From positions 905,242 to 969,241 of the forward strand of contig NIVC01000035.1 of NCBI GenBank assembly GCA_002269645.1: a stretch of 64,000 nt of DNA. Direction: 5' to 3'. This document shows positions 838-48,025 of this stretch, piece by piece. The translations under genes and the position numbers were made by a program. A model generated the notes under the pieces. That model was given only the letters and a program-made list of their open reading frames with translations. It made no database searches and was not told where the DNA came from. Within the stretch, counting starts at the first letter, position 1; every line of letters starts with the position of its first letter. This DNA comes from Macrostomum lignano (lineage: Eukaryota).

Positions 838-1578
838 TCAATTGAAGGGCGACAGGCACTCGCACAGGCCGGTTCTGATTGCATCAAAGCTGGCAGCGTC
901 TCCCAGAAAGGTTCGGGCAGAAACCGCGTCCTCGGAGCTTCTGAACCGGTTGTCGGGCTCTGCGCTGTCCCACAGGCTGGCATCAATGCTGATGTTGCAG
1001 GCCACCCAGCGCCAGCCTCCGTCGGGCTCCGCACTGCCCGGAGTCTGGAAACCGCCGACCCACATGGCGACGCCACCAGCCTTCGTGCTGTAAACTTGTC
1101 CGATGGCAGCCAGCTCGGCGCTGTCGATCACGTCCGCCATGATCACCAGACCGCTCTCCGACTCGCACCTCTGTCTCTGCACTGTCCAGGTGTTGGTCGT
1201 ATTGAAGAGCTTGTACTTCACTCCGCAGTGGTCGTCTCCGAAGTCGGACGGACACAGCGCACCCGGCTCGAGTCCCGGCTGCTGCTTCACGAACACTCGG
1301 CCTCTCCTGGAGCAGCCGCAGTCCCTCACCGACTTGCTGCACTTGTCGAACACGAACAGCTGGCACGGACCGTCAGCCAGGCTGAACGCCTGACAGCGCG
1401 GCTCCATGCTGCAGAGCAGCGAGCACTCGACGCTCAACTTTGCCAGGGGCTCGTTTCTGACGAACTCTGGCCGGATGCAGAGCGAGCCGTTGATGGCGTG
1501 GAACACCTGGCCTGGGGACACAGCGGGTGAGCTCAGCAGCAGCAGCAGCAGCAGCGACACAACTTTCATTGATGTCAT
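838..1578 (-). CDS. Secreted PAN/apple-like + C-type lectin domain protein, copy 1 (246 aa, intronless)
   Basis: Signal peptide MTSMKVVSLLLLLLLSSP; Cys-rich PAN-like segment (C..ECSLLCSMEPRCQAF..CQLF); CTLD motifs (TW..QRQRC, WVGG, WRW, W...EPDN, terminal LCEC). ATG at 1578. Confidence 0.85.
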   Translation of the reverse strand: MTSMKVVSLLLLLLLSSPAVSPGQVFHAINGSLCIRPEFVRNEPLAKLSVECSLLCSMEPRCQAFSLADGPCQLFVFDKCSKSVRDCGCSRRGRVFVKQQPGLEPGALCPSDFGDDHCGVKYKLFNTTNTWTVQRQRCESESGLVIMADVIDSAELAAIGQVYSTKAGGVAMWVGGFQTPGSAEPDGGWRWVACNISIDASLWDSAEPDNRFRSSEDAVSARTFLGDAASFDAIRTGLCECLSPFN

Positions 1579-3332: not shown

Positions 3333-4685
3333 TCAGTCAGTCAGTCAGTCAGTCAGTCAGTCAGTCAGTCAGTCAGTCAGTCAGTCAGTCAGTCAGTCAG
3401 TCAGTCAGTCAGTCAGTCAGTCAGTCAGTCAGTCAGTCAGCCAGTCAGTCAGTCAGTCAGTCAGTCAGTCAGTCAGTCAGCCAGTCAGTCAGTCAGTCAG
3501 TCAGTCAGTCAGTCAGTCAGTCAGTCAGTCAGTCAGTCAGTCAGTCAGTCAGTCAGTCAGTCAGTCAGTCAGTCAGTCAGTCAGTCAGTCAGTCAGTCAG
3601 TCAGTCAGTCAGTCAGTCAGTCAGTCAGTCAGTCAGTCAGTCAGTCAGTCAGTCAGTCAGTCAGTCAGTCAGTCAGTCAGTCAGTCAGTCAGTCAGTCAG
3701 TCAGTCAGTCAGTCAGTCAGTCAGTCAGTCAGTCAGTCAGTCAGTCAGTCAGTCAGTCAGTCAGTCAGTCAGTCAGTCAGTCAGTCAGTCAGTCAGTCAG
3801 TCAGTCAGTCAGTCAGTCAGTCAGCAGTCAGTCAGTCAGTCAGTCAGTCAGTCAGTCAGTCAGTCAGTCAGTCAGTCAGTCAGTCAGTCAGTCAGTCAGT
3901 CAGTCAGTCAGTCAGTCAGTCAGTCAGCCAGTCAGTCAGTCAGTCAGTCAGTCAGTCAGTCAGTCAGTCAGTCAGTCAGTCAGTCAGTCAGTCAGTCAGT
4001 CAGTCAGTCAGTCAGTCAGTCAGTCAGTCAGTCAGTCAGTCAGTCAGTCAGTCAGTCAGTCAGTCAGTCAGTCAGTCAGTCAGTCAGTCAGTCAGTCAGT
4101 CAGTCAGTCAGTCAGTCAGTCAGTCAGTCAGTCAGTCAGTCAGTCAGTCAGTCAGTCAGTCAGTCAGTCAGTCAGTCAGTCAGTCAGTCAGTCAGTCAGT
4201 CAGTCAGTCAGTCAGTCAGTCAGTCAGTCAGTCAGTCAGTCAGTCAGTCAGTCAGTCAGTCAGTCAGTCAGTCAGTCAGTCAGTCAGTCAGTCAGTCAGT
4301 CAGTCAGTCAGTCAGTCAGTCAGTCAGTCAGTCAGTCAGTCAGTCAGTCAGTCAGTCAGTCAGTCAGTCAGTCAGTCAGTCAGTCAGTCAGTCAGTCAGT
4401 CAGTCAGTCAGTCAGTCAGTCAGTCAGTCAGTCAGTCAGTCAGTCAGTCAGTCAGTCAGTCAGTCAGTCAGTCAGTCAGTCAGTCAGTCAGTCAGTCAGT
4501 CAGTCAGTCAGTCAGTCAGTCAGTCAGTCAGTCAGTCAGTCAGTCAGTCAGTCAGTCAGTCAGTCAGTCAGTCAGTCAGTCAGTCAGTCAGTCAGTCAGT
4601 CAGTCAGTCAGTCAGTCAGTCAGTCAGTCAGTCAGTCAGTCAGTCAGTCAGTCAGTCAGTCAGTCAGTCAGTCAGTCAGCCAGTC
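3333..4685. repeat. (TCAG)n microsatellite, about 1.35 kb
   Basis: Directly visible tetranucleotide array. Confidence 0.98.
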
Positions 4686-4726: not shown

Positions 4727-5413
4727 TCAAACGGCGACACACTCGCACAGCCCGTTCTTTGTCCTGGGATGGTAGGCGTCACCAAGACCAAAGTGAGCAA
4801 AGATTGCGTCCTCTTTGCCTCCTCCGTTGCTGGGCTCCGCTCCGCCCCACAGGCTGGCGTCGAATCTGATGTTGCAGGCCACCCAGCGCCAGCCTCCGTC
4901 GGGCTCCGCACTGCCCGGAGTCTGGAAGCCGCCGACCCACATGGAGACGCCGCCAGCCTTCGTGTTGAAAACTTGTCCGATGGCAGCCAGCTCGGCGCTG
5001 TCGATCACGTCCGCCATGATCACCAGACCGCTCTCCGACTCGCACCTCTGTCTCTGCACTGCCCAGGTGTTGATCGCATTGAACAGCTTGTACTTCACTC
5101 CGCAGTGGTCGTCTCCGAAGTCGGACGGACACAGCGCACCCGGCTCGAGTCCCGGCTGCTGCTTCACGAACACTCGGCCTCTCCTGGAGCAGCCGCAGTC
5201 CCTCACCGACTTGCTGCACTTGTCGAACACCGTCAGCCAGGCTAAACGCCTGACAGCGCGGCTCCATGCTGCAAAGGTTCGAGCACTCGATGTCCGACCT
5301 GGCTCGAGGCTCGTTTCTGACAAACTCTGGCCGGATGCAGAGAAAGCCAGACACGGCTTGGAACACCTGGCCCGAAGACACACCGGGTGAGCTCAGCAGC
5401 AGCAGCAGCAGCA
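4727..5413 (-). pseudogene. PAN + C-type lectin copy 2, 3' part; disrupted by LINE insertion and a 17-bp deletion
   Basis: High identity to copies 1 and 3. GAACAGCTGGCACGGAC (1354-1370 in copy 1) is missing between 5230 and 5231, causing a frameshift. Signal-peptide (CTG)n is cut at about 5408-5413 by the retrotransposon. Confidence 0.85.
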
Positions 5414-5486
5414 CGACCTCCTACCCGCCAAGTGGGGTGCTGTGGATACGCGATGGCCCGACACCAATCGCGGAACGAAAGGAGGT
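5408..5486 (+). ncRNA. HDV-like self-cleaving ribozyme at the element 5' end (predicted cleavage 5' of G5408)
   Basis: Manual fold. P1 GCAGCAC(5408-14)/GUGCUGU(5437-43) with G.U at position 1; P2 ACCUCCU(5416-22)/AGGAGGU(5480-86); P3 CCC(5424-26)/GGG(5434-36); 7-nt L3 GCCAAGU with CC pairing to GG(5444-45) as P1.1; P4 5449-5472; J4/2 contains C5476-G-A-A matching HDV C75-G76-A77-A78. Confidence 0.8.
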
Positions 5487-5552
5487 GTTCTGTTCAACTA
5501 CAAAGACAGCGCACGCTACGCTGTCAGCGCCAGGATGATCACCTTGTCTGGT

Positions 5553-5576
5553 GATGTCGAATCTAACCCCGGCCCA
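5553..5576 (+). other. 2A-like (StopGo) motif DVESNPGP
   Basis: GAT GTC GAA TCT AAC CCC GGC CCA, in frame with the element ORF; matches D(V/I)ExNPG|P, preceded by ITLSG. Confidence 0.85.
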
Positions 5577-7907
5577 CCATCGCCGGGGAGGAACCTGTGC
5601 GGAGTTTGCGGCGGAAGGCATACTCACAGAGGGCCAAAATGCTCGGAGTGCTCTGGCCAGCTGCATCTTAAGTGCAGTGGGCTGAACAGAGGGAGTTTCT
5701 ACGCGCAGAAGGTTACCAGCATAGAATGGATCGGGCCGTGCTGTAGGAAGGAGCCATTGCAGCCAGCTGGGCCCATTACTCCTGGTGAACGCCGGCCGCC
5801 TACCAGCAGTGCGAAATCCGATGCAGCCAACCAGGCTGCTGGCCAGTTGCATCTGTCGGAGCAGAAAGTTGTGTGGGCCAAGCTGAGCGGCTGGGGCTGG
5901 TGGCCAGTCAGGATGAAGGCTGAAGACTGGCCATGTGTCGGCAACGAAGTGGTGGTTTGGTGGTTTGGATGCAATGATAAGACTTTTTTTAAAAAAGCCA
6001 ATAAAAATAACGAATTCACCACCTCCGAGACTGACCGCTTTGCGCAGCAGAAAGCAGGTTGGAAGAAAGCCGTAGCGGAAGCCACTGAGTTCGTTCAAAG
6101 TGAACAAACGAAAGGAGCCAGCCAGCCGCCAGGAGAGGTCGAGGAGTATGGTAGGACAGAGCCAAAAGGCTCAGCTAGCGTCAGCCAAGCCTGCGGAGGG
6201 AGATGTTCCATCTGTAAAGCAAATATGAAGTTCGGTATCAGCGGAATTCAGTGCACGGGATGCGGAGTTAGAGTGCACCGCAGCTGTAGCGGATGCAGCA
6301 GGTACAACACCCAAGCCCAGTCCAGCTGGAGATGCGCCAGATGCGGCAGCAGCCCCCGGGGACGACGTCGCGGAGGCTGAGCAGCACCGCAGCAGCGGCG
6401 CCTATGACGGTGACCAGCAATGCGCTACCAAGGACAGTGGTGGACACTGTGCGGAGTGTCACAAGTACAGAAGGCGAGGCACCGGGGTCAGCTGCGGCGG
6501 CTGCGGGAAGACCGTGCACTGGACCTGCGCGGGCATTGAAAGCCGCGCCTGCAGAGAGAGGTTCAAAAAATATGGTGGATGGGAATGCAGCCTGTGCAGG
6601 GCGACCAAGGGGAAGGCCGCGGAGGTTCAGCGCTTGATTATGCCACCAGTCCGGCAGGGACGGTCGGCAACGAAAGCATCAGAGTCGCGCAGTGGAACTG
6701 CGACCACCTCAGAGCCAAACTGCCGCTGCTTGAGAAGTTCCTGGACGACCACAACGTTGACGTTATGCTGCTCCAAGAGACCAAGTTGAGGGAGGAAGAC
6801 GGTACCCTATCTATACCAGGCTACGAGATTGTCAGAAAAGACCGGCACAGGAAACTCCTCAGTACATTCGGTAGGGGAGGAGGCGTAGCCACGCTCATCA
6901 AAGCAGGAATCAAATACGAAGAGGTGGAATGCAACCTATGCCAGAAGGACGGCATCGAAATGATCGCTACTAAGATCTGGCTGAGAAGAGACCGCTCCAG
7001 CAACGGCAACGGCAACAGTGTCCAGATAGCGAATGTGTACATCCCGCCTGAAGGGTCCAGAGCGGTGAGCAGCGAGGCCATCAACAAACTCCCAGCAGGC
7101 AGGAATTGGCTAATCGCTGGCGACTTTAACGCCCACCACTCCCTCTGGGACAACATCTGTCCAGGTGACGACAGAGGTACAGCGCTCGTTGAGTGGCTGG
7201 ACAACAATGAATTAGCTGTGCTCAATGATGGCAGCGTCACTAGGGTTGATCCCACCGGGAGCATCAAATCATCGCCAGATATCACCTTCTGTAGCAGAGA
7301 GGACGAACCCATATGGTCCTGGGAAACAGCTCAGCTGCACGGGTCGGACCACCACCCCATCATCATGCAGCTAGGGCATGGCTGCAGCAACAGAGAGCCA
7401 GCCAGAAAGATCATCAGCTGGAATTGGAAAGCCGCTGACTGGACAGCCTACAGAGACAACATCGAAGCCGGCCTGGCAGAATCGATTTGCGGCGCTGGAT
7501 GCGTTAAGGAGAATGAGAAAAAGATCAGGGATATCATCATCAATGCTGCGAGAGCGTCGGTCGGTACCATTGCGCGCACAACCCGGAACCGGTCCTCCAT
7601 CAACGACGAGGTGAGGGAAGCCCTGGAGGAACTTGGCAAGTGCGACGCCTCAGCTGAACCGGAGCTATGGGCCGAAAAAGAACAACGGCTCAAGTCTGAG
7701 ATTAGGAAAAGCAAGGAGGAGGATGGGCGAAACCACCTGAGTAACAACGCGAGCAGTGCAAAAATGTGGTCAGTAGTCAAACGCCTCAATGGCAAAAGCT
7801 GCCCTGCAGCTGCCCTGCGTGAGATGGAAACTTCAGCGGAAGCAGAAATGGACCAGCCCATCCTCATGTCCGAAGTCGTGAGTGCGCTTGAAGCCATGGA
7901 TGGTAAC

Positions 7908-8730
7908 TATAGGAGGTTGCGCGCCTGTCGAGTTAAGCGGCTAAATATGTTTGCTTGCGCCTCCTTTTGATTTCAATTAGCCTTTCAACTTTACTGGCTT
8001 TACTGTTCAATCGAAAGTTTAGAACACAAGTTTTTGTTCGAACGATAGTTGTTAGGCCGCCAGTTTGCTCGCTCGCAAGTTGGCCCATTTCTACTTTTCC
8101 GCACTTATATTTATACAACAAAATTTGCCTCAGTCAGCGTTATTTCAAACCAATAGCAATTGCAAGAAAGTCTGGGAATTATTTTTTTGGTGCGAAAGTT
8201 TGGATGTCTGCGTGCCAGTTTCATGTGAACAGCGAAATCGGACACCGCCGTTGTGCGTCATTCGGCGGCTCCACCAGTGTTGCAGCTGTATCGATGTCGC
8301 AGATTTTGGGCGCTGATCTCAGCAGTTTTCGTGAGAACCAGACGTTCAGGCGTTCTTAGTGCAAGCCAAGTTCAGCCGGCTAAACTTTTCTAACTTTCAC
8401 TTGTGCAACAATTGAGCGTTGGGAAGCACAATGAACTCCTGCTGAACTGGTCTTGCTGTCCTGAGCCGATCGGCTGATTGTTGCGTACTGCTGAGATCGT
8501 TGATGCTGCTGCTGCTGATGGTGCAAGCCGAGCTACGTTGGGTGTCTTAGACAAAAGCTAGCGTCCGCAACGTTGGGGCCTACTTCATAACTTTGGTCCC
8601 CTCGCTCCAGGCTCACATTGGGTCCTCTCGTTGCCGTCCAGCCTCGCCAGGTGACTCGACCAGGTGACACGACCAGGTGACCTAGCCTATCCCCGTTCCT
8701 AGACTTATGAGCATTTTCTTATGGCTCTTA
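7908..8730. mobile_element. 823-bp unclassified insertion nested in the LINE ORF, 5-bp TSD GTAAC
   Basis: GTAAC at 7903-7907 and 8731-8735. Removing the insert plus one TSD copy (828 bp) restores the in-frame ...EAMDG-N-KAAGEDL... at the start of RT. Confidence 0.8.
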
Positions 8731-11112
8731 GTAACAAAGCGGCCGGCGAAGACCTTATCCACCCCAGGCTCCTCAAGGAATTGCCATCCAACAGCCTACC
8801 TGTCATCACTAGCCTCTTCAACGACTCCTACAGGCAGGCCGAAGTGCCCCAGAGCTGGCGCACGGCTAGAATCATCCCGCTCCTGAAGCATGGCAAAGAT
8901 GCTGAATGCATACCCTCATACAGGCCGATCAGCCTCACATCCTGCCTAGGCAAATGGCTTGAAAGAGTTATCACCAACAGAATTAGTTACCACCTCGAGA
9001 GCAAAGGGCTCCTTAGCGACTGCCAGGCTGGGTTTAGGGCTGGCAGATCCACGGAGGACCAACTACTCAGGCTCGCGCAGGACGCCGATGACGGCTTTCA
9101 GAAGAAAATCTGTACGCTTTTGCTACTGGTGGATTTCGAGCGAGCGTTCGACAAAGTGCTCCGCACCGGCCTCATCTGGAAACTGATCAGCAAAGGAGTG
9201 GGCAGGCTCTCGATCAGATGGATACAAGCGTGGCTGAGTCACAGATTAGCTAAAGTCAACTTCAATGGCAAGGACAGCAAGCTTAAAGTGCTCGAGCAAG
9301 GCCTGCCGCAAGGCTCCGTCCTGTCGCCGCTGCTGTTCCTGGTCTACATTGACGACCTCCTAGAAGGTCTCAGCGCGGTCGAGGGGGTCAAAGTTAGCGG
9401 CTTCGCGGACGACCTCGCCATCTGGACCTCTGGCAGGCAAGACCAGATGCGCGCGAGTATGGATAAAGCCATCCAGCTCACGGAGACTTGGAGCAATAAC
9501 TGGCTTATGCCGATTGCAGTAAGCAAGTGTTCCCTCACGCTTCTGTCCACGACTAGCACTAGAACCAGCCTAGAAGACACCACCTTCACGATGTACGGCA
9601 GCACTATCAGCTGGGCCCCAACCGCGAAGTTCCTGGGGCTCACCTTCGACAGAACGCTGAAGTTCGAGACGCTCGTTAACAACATCAAAGAGGCATGCCT
9701 TAAGAAAGTTAACATATTAAGGAAACTGGCTGGCAGTGACTGGGGCTGGAGCCTGGAGCTAATTAAAATCACGTACGAAGCTCTTATTAAGAGCAAGATC
9801 CTGTACGGCGCTCCAGCATGGATGCCTTGGATCAGCGAAAGCAGCTGGCACAAGCTCGAAGTGATACAGCGCTCAGCTGAAAGGATCATGACTGGTCTCA
9901 TGGCTACTACCCCGGTTGAAGCGCTCAGTATGGAAAGCGGCCTTGAGCCCCTCAAAGTGTGCAGCAAGGCCAGATGGGCCGAGAAATTCGACCGCCTCAG
10001 ACGACAGCCCCCGGTAGCATCAGAAGAGAGCTGGTTGGCGAAGGGCCAAAGCAGAGGCTTAAAAGAAAAGGCTGGAGAGCCCGAGCTAAAGAGTTGCTTG
10101 ATGACCATGGTCTGCTCAACATCACAGTGGAGAAGGATGAACAACCTGCCACGCTGGCCCCATGGGAGGAAAGGAAATTCACGATTCACATGGAAGGCCG
10201 GCGCAAGCTTTGCGAAGCTGACAACAGGAACCTGGCCGAGAACATCATCCAAAGCTGCGCAGCCGACGCAGACCTCATCCTCTACACGGACGGATCAGTT
10301 AGCAGTGACGGTAAAGGTGGTGGCGGAGTCGTTGTGACAGCCAAAGGGATCGACGGCTGGGACACACAAACCCGTATTGAGGTCGACGCCGGCAAGCCCT
10401 GCAGCTCACTCCAGGCTGAGCTGCACGCACTGCAAGCAGCCACTGATTGGATCCGTCACCATGGCCGGGGAAAAAGCACCTGCATTGCCACGGACAGCCT
10501 CAGCAGCCTCCAGCTCCTCCACAGCAGGAGAAGTAATCCGATAGCCAATAGAATCACCAACAACTTGCAGGCAGCCAGTGAGACCAACGGCCGGCTCATC
10601 ATTTGCTGGGTCCCGGCCCACTGTGGCCTCAGCGGGATCGAAGAGGCCGACACCACGGCAAAGGCCGCAGCCGGCAGACCAGCTGGAGGAGCCGGTGTGC
10701 TTGCCAACCCGGTTAAGAGATCCATCTACCGAGACCTGACCAGAGCGAAGGAATGGAGCCACCAACGCAGCAAAGAGACCTACAGCAAAGGCCCCAAAAG
10801 CAACTGGAAGAAGGACTATGCAGACCGCAGCGAAGCAGTGAGCTTCAGACGCTTCCGTACCGGACACTCCCTCGAACTGAACCAGTTCCGCAAGAGACTT
10901 GGCAACCAGGACAGTGACAGCTGCAGGCTATGTGGAGATGGCGAAGAATCCAACTCGCACTTAATGGATTGCCCGGCTACGTGGAAAAGGAGGCAGGAGT
11001 ACAACATCACCGGCCTGTGCGATCTGTGGAACCAACCAGACGCTGCCTACAGGTTCTGGAACTGGATCAAAGAAGCGCATGAGTTGAGCGGCACACACAC
11101 ACACACACACAC

Positions 11113-11170
11113 GCAGCAGCAGCAGCAGCAGCAGCAGAAGCAGCCGCGGCGCGATGTTTGCGGATGCCAT
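11113..11170 (-). pseudogene. Probable 5' end (start codon and signal peptide) of lectin copy 2
   Basis: ATG at 11170 gives MASANIAPRLLLLLLLLL up to the LINE tail; joins logically to LLLLLLSSPGVSSGQVF on the other side of the element. Confidence 0.7.
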
Positions 11171-15034: not shown

Positions 15035-15769
15035 TCATTCGAAGGGCGACACGCACTCGCACAGCCCGTTCCTTGACTCTTGTTGGTAGGCGTCACCAAG
15101 AACAAAGCGAGCAAAGACTGCGCCCTCGCTGCCTCCTCTGTTGTCGGGCTCTGCGCTGGCCCACAGGCTGGCGTCGAAGCTGATGTTGCAGGCCACCCAG
15201 CGCCAGCCTCCGTCGGGCTCCGCACTGCCCGGAGTCTGGAAGCCGCCGACCCACATGGCGACGCCGCCAGCCTTCGTGCTGTAAACTTGTCCGATGGCAG
15301 CCAGCTCGGCGCTGTCGATCACGTCCGCCATGATCACCAGACCGCTCTCCGACTCGCACCTCTGTCTCTGCACTGTCCAGGTGTTGGTCGTATTGAAGAG
15401 CTTGTACTTCACTCCGCAGTGGTCGTCTCCGAAGTCGGACGGACCCAGCGCACCCGGCTCGAGTCCCGGCTGCTGCTTCACGAACACCCGGCCTCTCCTG
15501 GAGCAGCCGCAGTCCCTCACCGACTTGCTGCACTTGTCGAACACGAACAGCTGGCACGGACCGTCAGCCAGGCTGAACGCCTGACAGCGCGGCTCCATGC
15601 TGCAGAGGTTTGAGCACTCGATGTCCGACCTGGCTCGAGGCTCGTTTCTGGTAAACTCGGGCCGGATGCAGAGCGAGCCGTTGATGACGTGGAACACCTG
15701 GCCTGGGGACACACCGGGTGAGCTCATCAGCATCAGCAGCAGCAGCGACACAACTTTTATTGATGTCAT
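15035..15769 (-). CDS. Secreted PAN/apple-like + C-type lectin protein, copy 3 (244 aa from MTSIK)
   Basis: Same architecture as copy 1; ATG at 15769; shares about 350 bp of upstream sequence with copy 1. Confidence 0.85.
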   Translation of the reverse strand: MTSIKVVSLLLLMLMSSPGVSPGQVFHVINGSLCIRPEFTRNEPRARSDIECSNLCSMEPRCQAFSLADGPCQLFVFDKCSKSVRDCGCSRRGRVFVKQQPGLEPGALGPSDFGDDHCGVKYKLFNTTNTWTVQRQRCESESGLVIMADVIDSAELAAIGQVYSTKAGGVAMWVGGFQTPGSAEPDGGWRWVACNISFDASLWASAEPDNRGGSEGAVFARFVLGDAYQQESRNGLCECVSPFE

Positions 15770-45199: not shown

Positions 45200-48025
45200 A
45201 TGAACAATACAATCGTTGCAATAAAGTTAGAGGACTCTGAACCAGGCTTTATTTTGCTGTCTGCCTCCAAAAATTCTATCACTGGCTGGAAAATTGAAGG
45301 TTCTCATGTTTCTCTTCTTAAGGTTTCCAGTGCTTTTAGTGATGGTATAGACTTTTTTGCTACTCTCAAACATGTTCAACAAGATAAGCAACTTTTCTTT
45401 GCACGAATTAATAGTGCCAACAAGTCTGTGTCAATCTGCAAGAATGTTGATGATATTGTGATTAAAGTCATTCAATTTGATATTATTGAAATCAATAATG
45501 AGAAATTAACATCAGAAGATTTTATGCCCATCTTTAATGTTGCTTTGTAAGTATTTTTTAGGTAAAAATATTGATTAAACATTTGCTTGTTTTTTGTTGC
45601 TATGTTTTTAATTCTAGAATATTTTATTAAATTTTTTTTCTTTTTTAAATTAGGCCTTAGGCCTAGTTGCCATAGTCCGGATCATGTTGGGTGCACGCCC
45701 AAACAAAAAGTAAATAATAACAAATGCATGCCAAAAAATATATAGTGCACGCCCATTCTCAAAAATATGCCAGTGTTGCGACAATAAAAGACCTTTTTTA
45801 CATTGTGACAATAAAATACCTTTTTTAAATTGCATAATAGACCCTTATTACCAGATTATTTGGTTGCTTGGTTGCTTTTTATGTGATGCTTTTTGGCGAT
45901 ATTATTTACAGTAGAAGATTTATATATGAAAAGATTTGTTTCAATGCTAATGTATAGTGCATGCCTATTCTCAAAAATATGCCAGTGTTGCGACAATAAA
46001 AGACCTTTTTTACATTGTGACAATAAAATACCATTTTTAAATTGCGTAATAGACCCTTATTACCAGATTATTTGGTTGCTTGGTTGCTTTTTATGTGATG
46101 CTTTTCGGCAATATTATTTACAGTAGAAGATTTATACACAAAAAGATTTGTTTCAATGCTCTTTTACAAGCTTAAAAAACTGGAAAGCTTAGAATTTGTG
46201 CTTAAAATAAACTTTTTTCATCTTTTTTCTACTTCACAATAACTCTTACACGTGATTCTATAAAGTGCATGCCAGGTATGCATGCATACTATTTTCTCAG
46301 GAGTGATGTACGCCAACTGTGCATGCCTAATTTTGGCATGCAAGGCCAATATACACCCAAATTTTTGGGCATATACTACATGATCTGGAGTGTGGCCTAG
46401 TTGCCCTATTGGTTTTATTATAGTGTTCCGCCGTAAGGAGGGTCCATGTATTGTAGCCATAGCCATAAGCAAAACTATGGCTTACTCCACTTCTCTGTAT
46501 TATAGATGGCCATTGGGACCTCAAAATTACCATATTCCTGTAGTTCCCGTAGCCATAGCTATAGTTTTACCAAAAAGTCTAAAAAACAAAATATTTTGAA
46601 TCAAGAAGATAACATAGTGCTTAAACAACTACAAATTGAATTAGAAAATAAAAGAAGCACTTAATTGTCTTTGTAAGATTATATTTTGTCTTTTTTCAGA
46701 GCAACAAGACTTAATCATTATTGAAAGTACTAATGCTAAACTTTTTCAAATTAATAAAAATTAGAGTTTGCTAGTGTTTTATTGTACTTTTTTAGGTATA
46801 TTTTATAAGTTTCTAGGTTGATAATACAGTTTATTAAAAGTATCTTTGTTTTACTCTACCTGTTTCTAATATTTTTTTTCAATTTTTAACATGAATAACT
46901 ACAGCTATGGGAATCTACGGAATGTAACAGCAACTACTATATTTCTGTAGTTGTAGCCATAAAAGCAGCTAGCTACCGTAGGCATATCTGTAGCTACCAT
47001 ATGTACTTTTTTACCATATTTGTCATAGGATCCGTAGCTATGGCTATGGTGGAACACTTTTATTATTAGTAATAGTGTCAATAAAAGCAATACTTAAAGA
47101 TAATGCTGTGACACTCTGATCCCAGTAATATATAGAAAGCTTAATATCAACATTTGAATATGATTGCAATTTCTGAAAACTTCAATGCGTTTCGCACGCC
47201 ATGGTGCATTGTCAGGATTTTATTAGAACGATTTGAGAAATTGAGATTGAAAGCAATTGATTAAATATTGGTTTTTTGCAACGTACACAGGTAAGGAGGG
47301 TAAGATTGAAAACAATTGATTACAACATTGATTACAACAATTATAGATTGAGATTGAAAGTTAAACCAAATGTACAAAATTCTTGTCCAGTGGTCAAAAG
47401 GCAGAATCAGGGGCGGTAGCTTAAGTAATTGAACGTCAAGCTAAGTGTACACAGCGTGCACGACTGTGTCACTCACTGTTCAGAAAACGCGGAGAATGTG
47501 ACTTGCACCACTATGTTGTAATTGGGTGTTGAGATTCGGGGTCTGAGCTTTTATGTGCATGATTACCTTCACCTTCTCAACAATGCTCATTCTGACAGGT
47601 CATTGGAGTCCCACCTGGCGGCAGCTCAGGCCGCTTTGGCCAGCCAATCAGCTGAGCTGGCTGATCTGCACCAGCGCAACGAACAGTTGCTGGCCAAGTA
47701 CACTGGAACTGCCGCTGAGAAGGCCGCCATACGCGACAACCTCTTGACTGCATTCTCCCGAGTGCTCAACTCTAAAAAAGAGCGCATTCGCCAGTTGGTT
47801 GACAAGGATCCAGTTGACAGGTCTGAGTCAGACGAAGTTGGAGACGGTGATGCTGCTAATAGCGAGGGCGGCGGCGACATCAAACGCGGCGGCAACATCA
47901 AACGGAAAGTGCCAACAACAAAAAAGGCGGCAACATCAAAGAAAACTAAGCCAGCAGTTCGACGCACTAGAAGCGGTGCGAAATCAGCTGCCGCTGAAGA
48001 GGATAGTGGAAGTGAAGAATTCTGA
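45200..48025 (+). CDS. XRCC4: XRCC4-like NHEJ protein, 2 exons (45200-45546, 47599-48025), 257 aa
   Basis: Exon 2 has a coiled coil and FSRVLNSKKERIRQL (XRCC4 signature F..VLN.KK.KIR.L). Exon 1 resembles the head domain in length and pattern (..KNVDDIVIKVIQFDI..). Phase-2 junction tt|g with GTAAGT donor and CAG acceptor. Confidence 0.8.
45744..46150. repeat. Tandem duplication of approx. 200 bp in the XRCC4 intron
   Basis: Block starting TAGTGCA.GCC.ATTCTCAAAAATATGCCAG at about 45744 repeats at about 45954. Confidence 0.85.

What the first reader, a model, noticed from the sequence alone, without database searches (positions are those of the whole stretch)
5408..5486. HDV-like ribozyme at the LINE 5' end, with P1 built from target-like GCAGCA
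Seen: the first 79 nt fold into the full nested double pseudoknot, with 7-bp P1 starting in a G.U pair, P1.1, 3-bp P3, 7-nt L3, P2, P4 and a CGAA J4/2 (candidate catalytic C5476). Deviations from HDV are G rather than U at the first L3 position and one extra A before P3. Known: HDV-like ribozymes process the 5' ends of R2 and trypanosomatid L1Tc/Ingi RNAs, and some R2 ribozymes include target rRNA sequence. Inference: the 5' strand of P1 (GCAGCAC) is indistinguishable from the flanking (CAG)n, so the processed RNA would begin with target-matching sequence. That could aid 5' integration into CAG repeats.
Basis: partly seen in the sequence, partly recalled or inferred. Interest (0 to 1): 0.9.

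Follow-up and report, generated by a model that had tools for sequence, protein, structure and literature searches.

The report
HDV-like ribozyme at LINE start
The first 79 bases of a dead jumping gene (a LINE sitting in a CAG repeat) fold into a hepatitis-delta-type self-cutting RNA, as do its relatives that sit in CAA repeats, so this is a real but expected new example of a known retrotransposon device.

Summary
It begins exactly where a 5.7-kb non-LTR element meets a (CAG)n tract.

The fold is homologous, not chance. Related elements from metagenomes sit in (CAA)n repeats and carry the same fold starting at "...CAACA|G". A covariance model built from one relative alone finds only 5408-5486 in the window (E about 9e-6). 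P2, P3 and P4 differ by compensatory changes.

Two points of the interpretation need correcting.
- The P1 strand GCAGCAC is encoded by the element. It is identical in two relatives flanked by (CAA)n, so it is not built from the target. It merely happens to continue the (CAG)n here.
- The G at the first L3 position is U in the three relatives with a standard L3. The same G/G combination slows the antigenomic HDV ribozyme 470-fold. This copy also has frameshifts and a nested insertion, so it is probably a crippled relic.

HDV-like ribozymes at LINE 5' ends are already known, including in the microsatellite-specific element Dong. This is a new member of a known kind. Self-cleavage remains untested.

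The parts
5394..5407 (+). 5' flank: (CAG)4CA of the target tract. On the minus strand these are CTG (Leu) codons of a host signal peptide.
   Evidence: Sequence. Paralogous uninterrupted sites. Joining the flanks restores the host ORF.
5408..5414 (+). P1 5' strand GCAGCAC. The predicted cleavage site lies 5' of G5408, which is also the first base of the element.
   Evidence: Pairs with 5437-5443. The same heptamer starts the ribozyme in L005 and L007.
5416..5422 (+). P2 5' strand ACCUCCU. G5415 is J1/2 and A5423 is J2/3.
   Evidence: Six of 7 pairs show changes on both sides among relatives.
5424..5436 (+). P3 (CCC/GGG) closing L3 GCCAAGU. C5428 and C5429 form P1.1. G5432 is the conserved L3 G. 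G5427 replaces the usual U.
   Evidence: PMC3386971 for the effect of G/G.
5437..5445 (+). P1 3' strand GUGCUGU, followed by the P1.1 3' strand GG.
5446..5475 (+). P4 hairpin: stem 5449-5454 with 5467-5472, plus joiners.
   Evidence: The P4 sequence is unrelated in L005 and L007 but still pairs. P4 is absent in L001 and L009a.
5476..5479 (+). J4/2 CGAA. C5476 is the candidate catalytic cytosine.
   Evidence: CGAA directly precedes the P2 3' strand in the window, L005 and L007, and lies 2 and 4 nt before it in L001 (CGAAGA) and L009a (CGAATCTC).
5480..5486 (+). P2 3' strand AGGAGGU, the 3' end of the ribozyme.
5535..5576 (+). Start codon and 2A 'ribosome-skipping' peptide, MITLSGDVESNPGP, 49 nt after the ribozyme.
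5408..11112 (+). Whole non-LTR element: 2A, PHD, PWWP, PHD, AP endonuclease, RT, RNase H, CCHC, then a (CA)10 tail. It is degenerate: in-frame stops and frameshifts at 6378-6560, and an RT/RNase H frameshift near 9959-10337.
7908..8735 (.). Nested 828-bp insertion between the endonuclease and RT, flanked by GTAAC direct repeats.
11113..11144 (+). 3' flank: the (GCA/CAG)n continuation of the target tract.
1534..1554 (-). Natural 'empty site': (CTG)7 poly-Leu codons in the intact paralog 838-1578(-). A third copy lies near 15632-15749.

Best explanation
Window 5408-5486 is the 5'-terminal HDV-like self-cleaving ribozyme of a single-ORF, AP-endonuclease-type LINE (2A, PHD/PWWP, APE, RT, RNase H, CCHC). 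The element belongs to a lineage that lives in trinucleotide microsatellites: (CAA)n in the relatives found, (CAG)n here.

Proposed mechanism, by analogy with R2, R4/Dong, Baggins and L1Tc:
- The element is transcribed as part of a longer RNA, either read-through from outside or from an upstream copy in a head-to-tail array.
- The double-pseudoknot fold cuts 5' of G+1, using the J4/2 cytosine (C5476).
- This releases a unit-length RNA whose first base is the first base of the DNA copy. The folded 5' end may also help translation of the 2A-led ORF 49 nt downstream.

Shown: the fold; its conservation and covariation; its exact coincidence with the repeat/element junction in five elements; and that the element is an insertion in a (CAG)n tract.

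Inferred: catalysis, co-transcription, and any role in translation.

This particular copy is a relic. It has an L3 U-to-G change expected to slow cleavage by orders of magnitude, frameshifts and a nested insertion. P1 (GCAGCAC) is element-encoded, and its resemblance to the (CAG)n target is specific to this lineage.
For: All helices are present.

Descriptor statistics: 4 of 400 window shuffles match as well, and 0-2 of 10,000 matches are anchored at +1 of shuffled 5' UTRs for the window, L005 and L001.

Relatives with the same protein layout carry the fold starting right after '...CAACAACA':
- L005:446-516
- L007:34-112
- L001:578-633
- L009:153-216

Covariance models: the L005-only model finds the window site (37 bits, E about 9e-6). 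The model built from window plus L005 finds L007 (E about 0.01).

Pair counts on window/L005/L007: 98.6% of cells paired, 12 pairs changed on both sides, 0 of 500 shuffles as good, and slid controls at 35-49%. The five-sequence table gives P1 33/35, P2 37/37 and P3 15/15 cells paired.

The ribozyme hits among the 10 sub-threshold Rfam hits in the relatives fall exactly on the predicted sites: RF00094 on L005:444-518, and RF02682 on L001:578-647 and L005:446-510.

Insertion status: paralogs carry an uninterrupted (CAG)7, and joining the flanks restores the host signal-peptide ORF.

Precedent: PMC3774820, PMC3185411, and PMC11620745 citing Ruminski 2011.
Against: - No cleavage assay exists for any member of this lineage.
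- Rfam models do not reach threshold on any member, and give nothing at all on the window copy.
- The window copy lacks the conserved L3 U (G5427).
- L007 has a 27-nt P3/L3 region in place of 13 nt.
- L001 and L009a have an A.C mismatch in P1 and no P4, and P1.1 of L009a does not pair fully.
- A second element in L009 (5' end at 4735), also after (ACA)n, shows no HDV fold.
- Only five sequences were available, and they were aligned partly by searching for pairing, which favours pairing.
- The host gene is on the opposite strand, so it cannot supply a sense co-transcript for this copy.
Confidence: 0.8

Rival explanations
1. This is an R2-style arrangement. The P1 5' strand is target DNA, not element sequence. 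Cleavage occurs inside the upstream (CAG)n, so the RNA carries target repeats that later anneal to the target and guide 5' joining.
For: GCAGCA continues the (CAG)n in phase. P1' can also pair 6 of 7 bp with registers 3, 6, 9 and 12 nt upstream, so some upstream cleavage is conceivable. R2 does exactly this with 28S sequence (PMC3774820).
Against: The same GCAGCAC heptamer starts the ribozyme in L005 and L007, whose upstream flank is (CAA)n. In L005 it lies only 14 nt after the 3' end of the previous copy. It is therefore carried by the element. The native register is the only 7-bp one and the only one that stacks directly on P3. The (CAA)n relatives have no target-matching 5' end and still show uniform junctions.
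Confidence: 0.12
2. The conserved fold is kept for a non-catalytic role, such as binding the element's protein, internal ribosome entry or an internal promoter. It does not self-cleave in this lineage.
For: In R2 the ribozyme region also binds R2 protein and is proposed to promote translation (PMC6765202). In L1Tc the same 77 nt act as a promoter (PMC3383444). Several members deviate from the canon: P1 mismatches, loss of P4, an expanded L3, and G5427.
Against: CGAA in J4/2, the L3 G, P1.1 and a P1 that begins exactly at the element's first base are the catalytic-core features. A mere binding site would not need them. A genomic 5' end coinciding with the predicted cut site is what cleavage predicts.
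Confidence: 0.1
3. It is a chance fold in GC-rich sequence next to a repeat.
For: The generic descriptor is met by about 1% of shuffled windows. A 'medium' quality match also exists at 45449-45538 in AT-rich sequence. The MFE z-score is not significant.
Against: The position is exactly at the LINE junction. The site is detected independently by a model built from another element. There is covariation. The same fold sits at the same place in four relatives.
Confidence: 0.02

Closest known systems
L1TcRz / Pr77 of the Trypanosoma cruzi L1Tc element (Ingi clade)
   Same: A compact (77 nt versus 79 nt) HDV-like ribozyme forms the very first nucleotides of a single-ORF APE-type LINE. That LINE also begins its ORF with a 2A peptide and carries RNase H (PMC3185411, PMC3383444, PMC3708506). 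Cleavage is at +1.
   Different: No sequence relationship was shown, and clade placement was not tested. L1Tc is not microsatellite-associated. Its first pair is C1-based, and its 77 nt also act as a promoter. Here PHD and PWWP modules lie between 2A and APE.
R2 5' ribozyme
   Same: An HDV-like fold at the 5' end of a site-specific LINE. P1 defines the 5' end. In many R2s the P1 5' strand is target sequence, and this is proposed to guide 5' joining (PMC3774820).
   Different: R2 is an RLE-type element in 28S rDNA, usually with a long J1/2. Here P1 is element-encoded and only coincides with the target in the (CAG)n lineage.
Dong and R4 (R4 clade)
   Same: Dong is a microsatellite-specific ((TAA)n) LINE. 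Its HDV-like ribozyme was shown to cleave at the element's 5' end (PMC3774820, section 15).
   Different: It has an RLE-type endonuclease, a different clade and a different repeat. No 2A, PHD or RNase H architecture.
Rfam RF00094 (HDV ribozyme) and RF02682 (HDV-like ribozyme of F. prausnitzii)
   Same: Relatives L005 and L001 align full length to these models at the predicted coordinates. The P3-L3 core of L001 closely matches the RF02682 consensus.
   Different: Scores of 22-27 bits fall below the gathering thresholds of 44-50. The window copy gives no hit.
2A-PHD-APE single-ORF LINEs of marine invertebrates (Crack/CR1-type elements of amphioxus and sea urchin)
   Same: An N-terminal 2A followed by PHD finger(s), then APE-RT, in one ORF (PMC3708506).
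   Different: That paper mentions no ribozyme. Those clades lack RNase H. The relationship was not tested here.

Membership tests
HDV-like self-cleaving ribozymes | Nested double pseudoknot in the order P1, P2, P3, L3, P3', P1', P1.1', P4, J4/2, P2'. | tested here: met
   The same order is seen in L005, L007, L001 and L009a.
HDV-like self-cleaving ribozymes | Helices supported by compensatory changes among homologues. | tested here: met
   Twelve pairs changed on both sides, 98.6% of cells paired, 0 of 500 shuffles as good. Five-sequence table. Only 3-5 sequences were available.
HDV-like self-cleaving ribozymes | Catalytic cytosine in J4/2, just before the P2 3' strand. | tested here: met
   C5476 lies in CGAA. 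CGAA is conserved in all five sequences.
HDV-like self-cleaving ribozymes | L3 with U at its first position and G near its end, forming the reverse-wobble metal site. | tested here: not met
   The window has G5427 and G5432. L005, L001 and L009a have U and G. G/G is 470-fold slower in the antigenomic HDV ribozyme (PMC3386971).
HDV-like self-cleaving ribozymes | Two-base-pair P1.1 between L3 and the nucleotides after P1'. | tested here: met
   C5428-G5445 and C5429-G5444. U.G/C-G in L005, C-G/U-A in L001, incomplete in L009a.
HDV-like self-cleaving ribozymes | Score above the curated threshold of an Rfam HDV-type model. | tested here: not met
   No hit on the window at gathering threshold or at E<=10. 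Relatives score 22-27 bits against thresholds of 44-50. These models are narrow and cannot encode the pseudoknots.
HDV-like self-cleaving ribozymes | Mg2+-dependent self-scission 5' of P1, giving a 5'-OH product. | not testable with these tools
   Indirect only: the genomic 5' ends of five elements coincide with the predicted cut site.
Ribozyme-terminated, target-specific non-LTR retrotransposons (R2/R4/Dong/SART/L1Tc type) | The ribozyme occupies the first nucleotides of a full-length element that encodes RT. | tested here: met
   The element runs 5408-11112 with APE, RT and RNase H.
Ribozyme-terminated, target-specific non-LTR retrotransposons (R2/R4/Dong/SART/L1Tc type) | Repeated insertion into one kind of target sequence. 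| tested here: inconclusive
   There is one copy in the window, inserted in (CAG)n. Relatives are flanked by (CAA)n, mostly as head-to-tail arrays. In those arrays the 3' tail and the target cannot be told apart.
R2-type 'target-derived P1' | The P1 5' strand lies in upstream target DNA, outside the element. | tested here: not met
   GCAGCAC is retained in L005 and L007 behind (CAA)n.
Ingi/L1Tc clade | RT phylogeny placing the element in that clade. | not tested
   Only the domain content (2A, APE, RT, RNase H, C-terminal zinc knuckle) is shared. No reference sequences were compared.

The most novel reading that the evidence does not exclude
In the (CAG)n-dwelling branch of this LINE lineage, the ribozyme's own P1 strand (GCAGCAC) has the same sequence as the target. 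This would have two consequences.
- P1' can slip along the upstream repeat. Registers at -3 to -12 keep 6 of 7 bp. Transcripts would then be cut at several CA|G positions and carry target repeats at their 5' ends.
- Even the canonical product starts with 6 nt of target homology.

Either effect could let the cDNA 3' end anneal to the cleaved top strand and give homology-guided 5' joining, as proposed for R2. Pre-existing P1 sequence may thereby have eased a switch of target from (CAA)n to (CAG)n.
Probability: 0.2. Interest if true: 0.6.

Novelty: new member of a known kind. Interest (0 to 1): 0.45.

Why it matters
- It adds a new lineage to the set of retrotransposons that define their RNA 5' end with an HDV-like ribozyme. 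The lineage is of the AP-endonuclease type, is 2A-led, and is associated with trinucleotide repeats.
- It supplies natural sequence variation for this fold: P4-less forms of 56-64 nt, an expanded L3, and a G/G L3.
- It gives a natural system in which the relation between the P1 sequence and the target repeat could be studied.
- For annotation, it shows that Rfam's HDV models miss this lineage entirely. It also shows that a coding (CTG)n poly-leucine tract of a signal peptide can act as a landing site that destroys the gene.

Tried and rejected
- Rfam scan of the whole window at gathering threshold, and of 5300-5600 at E<=10: no hit.
- Nested MFE folding: it recovers P2, an extended P3 hairpin and P4, but z = -0.57. 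It is uninformative for a pseudoknot.
- Search for other copies of the ribozyme or the element in the window: none.
- Protein search with the element's ORF1: no homologues at E<=1e-3.
- Pattern AACAACAGCAGCAC...GTGCTGY in viral contigs (7 loci) and prokaryotic genomes (84 loci): all chance, none folds.
- Other 2A-PHD LINE 5' regions (L101, L102, L103, L105): no microsatellite junction and no HDV fold.
- L003, L004, L008 and L104: these contigs do not reach a 5' end.
- L009 second element (4735 onward): an exhaustive search for P1/P3 combinations gave nothing convincing.
- MAFFT alignment of the five ribozymes was not in structural register and was not used for counting. Infernal alignment and a hand segmentation were used instead.
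- The looser descriptor gives many false hits inside G/T-rich tandem repeats, for example window 40.3-41.7 kb. These were discarded as repeat artefacts.
- A weak CM hit at L004:2806-2872 (E 0.55) lies inside coding sequence and was taken as chance.
- The RT clade of the element could not be assigned, because no reference LINE proteins were at hand.

Full report
**1. The observation**

- P1: G5408-C5414 with G5437-U5443, 7 bp, opening with G.U.
- J1/2: G5415.
- P2: A5416-U5422 with A5480-U5486, 7 bp.
- A single A5423 follows P2.
- P3: CCC 5424-5426 with GGG 5434-5436.
- L3: GCCAAGU.
- P1.1: C5428-G5445 and C5429-G5444.
- P4: stem 5449-5454 with 5467-5472.
- J4/2: CGAA, with C5476.

Rfam finds nothing, either at gathering threshold over the whole window or at E<=10 over 5300-5600. 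The nested MFE fold recovers P2, P3 and P4 but is not unusual (z = -0.57). Neither method can score the two pseudoknots.

I wrote a generic HDV descriptor to estimate chance. A match at least as good as the observed one occurs in 4 of 400 dinucleotide shuffles of the 64-kb window, both strands. Weaker matches are common, at 0.17 to 1.2 per window. The fold alone is therefore roughly a 1% event per window. Its position, not its existence, is what needs explaining.

**2. What surrounds it**

The fold is the first 79 nt of a non-LTR retrotransposon spanning 5408-11112. Its parts are:
- an ORF starting at 5535 with a 2A peptide (MITLSGDVESNPGP);
- PHD and PWWP modules;
- AP endonuclease, reverse transcriptase, RNase H and a CCHC knuckle;
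- a (CA)10 tail, followed by (GCA)n outside the element.

The copy is dead. It has stops and paired frameshifts at 6378-6560, an RT/RNase H frameshift, and an 828-bp nested insertion at 7908-8735.

The element is a genuine insertion in a (CAG)n tract.
- The 5' flank (5200-5407) is paralogous to two other places in the window, near 1448-1558 and 15632-15749. There (CAG)7 is uninterrupted.
- On the minus strand that tract encodes the poly-leucine core of a signal peptide. The intact paralog is 838-1578(-), beginning MTSMKVVSLLLLLLLSSP.
- Joining 5407 to 11113 restores MASANIAPR-L15-SSPGVSSGQVF in frame.
- The 15 Leu codons, against 7 in the paralog, fit a target-site duplication of up to about 24 bp, or a longer original tract.

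**3. Relatives**

The ORF1 protein has no database homologues. The RT finds relatives at no more than 51% identity, mostly on short marine and other metagenome contigs. Fetching contigs gave four further 5' ends with the same N-terminal 2A-PHD protein (alignment).

In all four, the sequence immediately upstream is ...CAACAACA. In L001, L005 and L009 that repeat follows the 3' end of another copy, so these are head-to-tail arrays. L104, L002 and L008 also end in (CAA)n or mixed CAA/CAG repeats.

The sequence starting right after the repeat folds as follows.

| Element | P1 | P2 | P3 | L3 | P1.1 | P4 | J4/2 |
|---|---|---|---|---|---|---|---|
| L005:446-516 | GCAGCAC/GUGCUGC | UGUCCCC/GGGGACG, then one A | ACC/GGU | UUCACGU | UC/GG | 8 bp | CGAA |
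| L007:34-112 | GCAGCAC/GUGCUGU | UUCCUCAA/UUGAGGAA | GGG/CCC closing a 27-nt P3/L3 region (normally 13 nt) | expanded | not assessed (P1.1' is AG) | 6 bp | CGAA |
| L001:578-633 | GCCCAAC/GUCGGGC, one A.C mismatch | 8 bp | ACC/GGU | UCUACGU | CU/AG | none | CGAAGA |
| L009:153-216 | CCAGAUC/GAUCCGG, one A.C mismatch | 7 bp | CCC/GGG | UACCCGC | incomplete | none | CGAA |

**4. Tests of homology and structure**

- A covariance model built from L005:446-516 alone, with only P2, P3 and P4 specified, was searched over the window plus 13 loci (152 kb). Its only hit apart from L005 itself is window 5408-5486. The match is full length, 37 bits, E about 9e-6 with rough calibration.
- A model built from window plus L005 finds L007:34-111 at E about 0.01.
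- On the Infernal alignment of window, L005 and L007, I added P1 and P1.1 as pseudoknots that had not been modelled. 98.6% of cells pair, and 12 pairs change on both sides: 6 of 7 in P2, 2 of 3 in P3 and 4 of 8 in P4. None of 500 shuffles does as well, and sliding the partners drops pairing to 35-49%.
- My hand segmentation of all five sequences gives P1 33/35, P2 37/37 and P3 15/15 cells paired. This table is biased towards pairing, because the folds were found by looking for complementarity.
- As a control, the looser family descriptor hits shuffled 120-nt 5' UTRs anchored at nucleotide 1 in 0, 2 and 0 of 10,000 trials for the window, L005 and L001.
- Among the 10 sub-threshold Rfam matches in the relatives (E<=10), the three to ribozyme families fall exactly on the predicted sites: RF00094 on L005:444-518 (26.6 bits), RF02682 on L001:578-647 (24.4 bits) and RF02682 on L005:446-510 (22.6 bits). 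Two of them are the top-scoring hits.

**5.

The ribozyme assignment stands.

The claim that P1 is 'built from target-like GCAGCA' needs revision. GCAGCAC is the first heptamer of L005 and L007 too, and there the flank is (CAA)n. In L005 only 14 nt of repeat separate it from the previous copy. The heptamer therefore travels with the element. In the window it merely continues the (CAG)n in phase.

That coincidence does create something the relatives lack. P1' can pair 6 of 7 bp with registers 3, 6, 9 and 12 nt upstream. Even the canonical product starts with 6 nt of target homology. The R2 model gives a precedent for such homology guiding 5' joining. In that model, target sequence left on the RNA 5' end lets the cDNA anneal to the target and prime second-strand synthesis (PMC3774820). 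Nothing here tests it, and the (CAA)n relatives achieve uniform CA|N junctions without it.

The G at the first L3 position is U in the three relatives with a standard L3. In the antigenomic HDV ribozyme the G/G combination at these two positions keeps only residual activity: k2 is 470-fold lower, with 16% cleavage in 2 h (PMC3386971, Table 1). In R2, loss of the partner G abolishes cleavage (PMC3774820). Together with the coding lesions, this makes G5427 most simply a decay mutation in a dead copy.

**6. Mechanism**

By analogy with R2, R4/Dong, Baggins and L1Tc, the fold cuts a longer transcript 5' of G+1. That transcript could be read-through from outside or from the upstream unit of an array. 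The cut yields a unit-length RNA whose first base equals the first base of new DNA copies. The structured, uncapped 5' end may also assist initiation at the 2A-led ORF (PMC6765202, PMC3185411).

The fold, the covariation and the junction coincidence are shown. Catalysis, co-transcription and any translational role are inferred.

For this copy the neighbouring host gene is antisense, so it could not provide a sense co-transcript.

**7. Comparison and novelty**

HDV-like ribozymes are already documented at the 5' ends of R2, R4, R6, RTE, SART, Baggins and L1Tc (PMC11620745, citing Ruminski 2011). Dong, a (TAA)n-specific element, has one that was shown to cleave (PMC3774820, section 15). 2A-PHD-APE single-ORF LINEs are known in marine invertebrates (PMC3708506); that paper does not mention ribozymes.

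L1Tc is the closest functional parallel. It has a 77-nt 5' ribozyme, a 2A peptide, APE, RT and RNase H.

The present case is therefore a new member of a known kind: a previously undescribed, trinucleotide-repeat-associated, APE-type lineage with a compact HDV-like 5' ribozyme that current Rfam models miss.

Negative and odd cases remain. The second element in L009 shows no fold. Other 2A-LINE 5' regions have neither a repeat nor a fold. Several members deviate from the canon.

**8. Verdict**

- Observation: confirmed.
- Interpretation: partly supported.
- Confidence that this is a homologous HDV-like ribozyme element defining the LINE 5' end: about 0.8.
- Confidence that this individual copy cleaves at normal rates: low.
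- Interest: moderate, 0.45.

Noticed in passing
window 838-1578(-), 4727-5414(-) plus 11113-11170(-), and about 15530-15750: A small family of intronless secreted-protein genes, with a poly-Leu signal peptide encoded by (CTG)n and only weak PAN-domain similarity (E 0.013). The middle copy is split by the LINE and also carries a frameshift relative to the intact paralog.
   Followed up: partly
window 7908-8735: An 828-bp insertion nested in the LINE between the endonuclease and RT, flanked by GTAAC direct repeats. Its length is a multiple of three. Its identity was not determined.
   Followed up: no
window 3333-4685 and throughout: A 1.35-kb (TCAG)n array lies just upstream. The window is packed with dozens of minisatellite arrays with periods of 15-180 bp (70 TRF rows). 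This is typical of some marine invertebrate genomes. The organism was not identified.
   Followed up: no
window 45449-45538 (+): A second, AT-rich match to the medium-stringency HDV descriptor, with 2 G.U pairs in P1. About 0.17 such matches are expected per shuffled window, so it was taken as chance.
   Followed up: partly
L001:578-633 and L009:153-216: Relatives whose ribozymes have no P4 at all (56 and 64 nt) and an A.C mismatch in P1. They may be natural minimal HDV-like variants or decayed copies.
   Followed up: partly
L007:49-75: The P3/L3 region is expanded to 27 nt while P1, P2, P4, P1.1' and CGAA are intact. This is an unusual L3 architecture, if it is functional.
   Followed up: no
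L009:4702-4940: A second element in the same contig follows (ACC)5(ACA)6 and has a 2A-led ORF, but its 5' UTR shows no recognisable HDV fold.
   Followed up: partly
L001, L005, L009 (whole contigs): Relatives occur as head-to-tail arrays separated only by 12-18 nt of (CAA)n. This suggests that the 3' repeat tail of one copy serves as the landing site for the next.
   Followed up: partly
L008:3380-3493: The 3' end of a 47%-identical relative runs into a mixed CAG/CAA tract. This may be an intermediate between the (CAA)n and (CAG)n associations.
   Followed up: no
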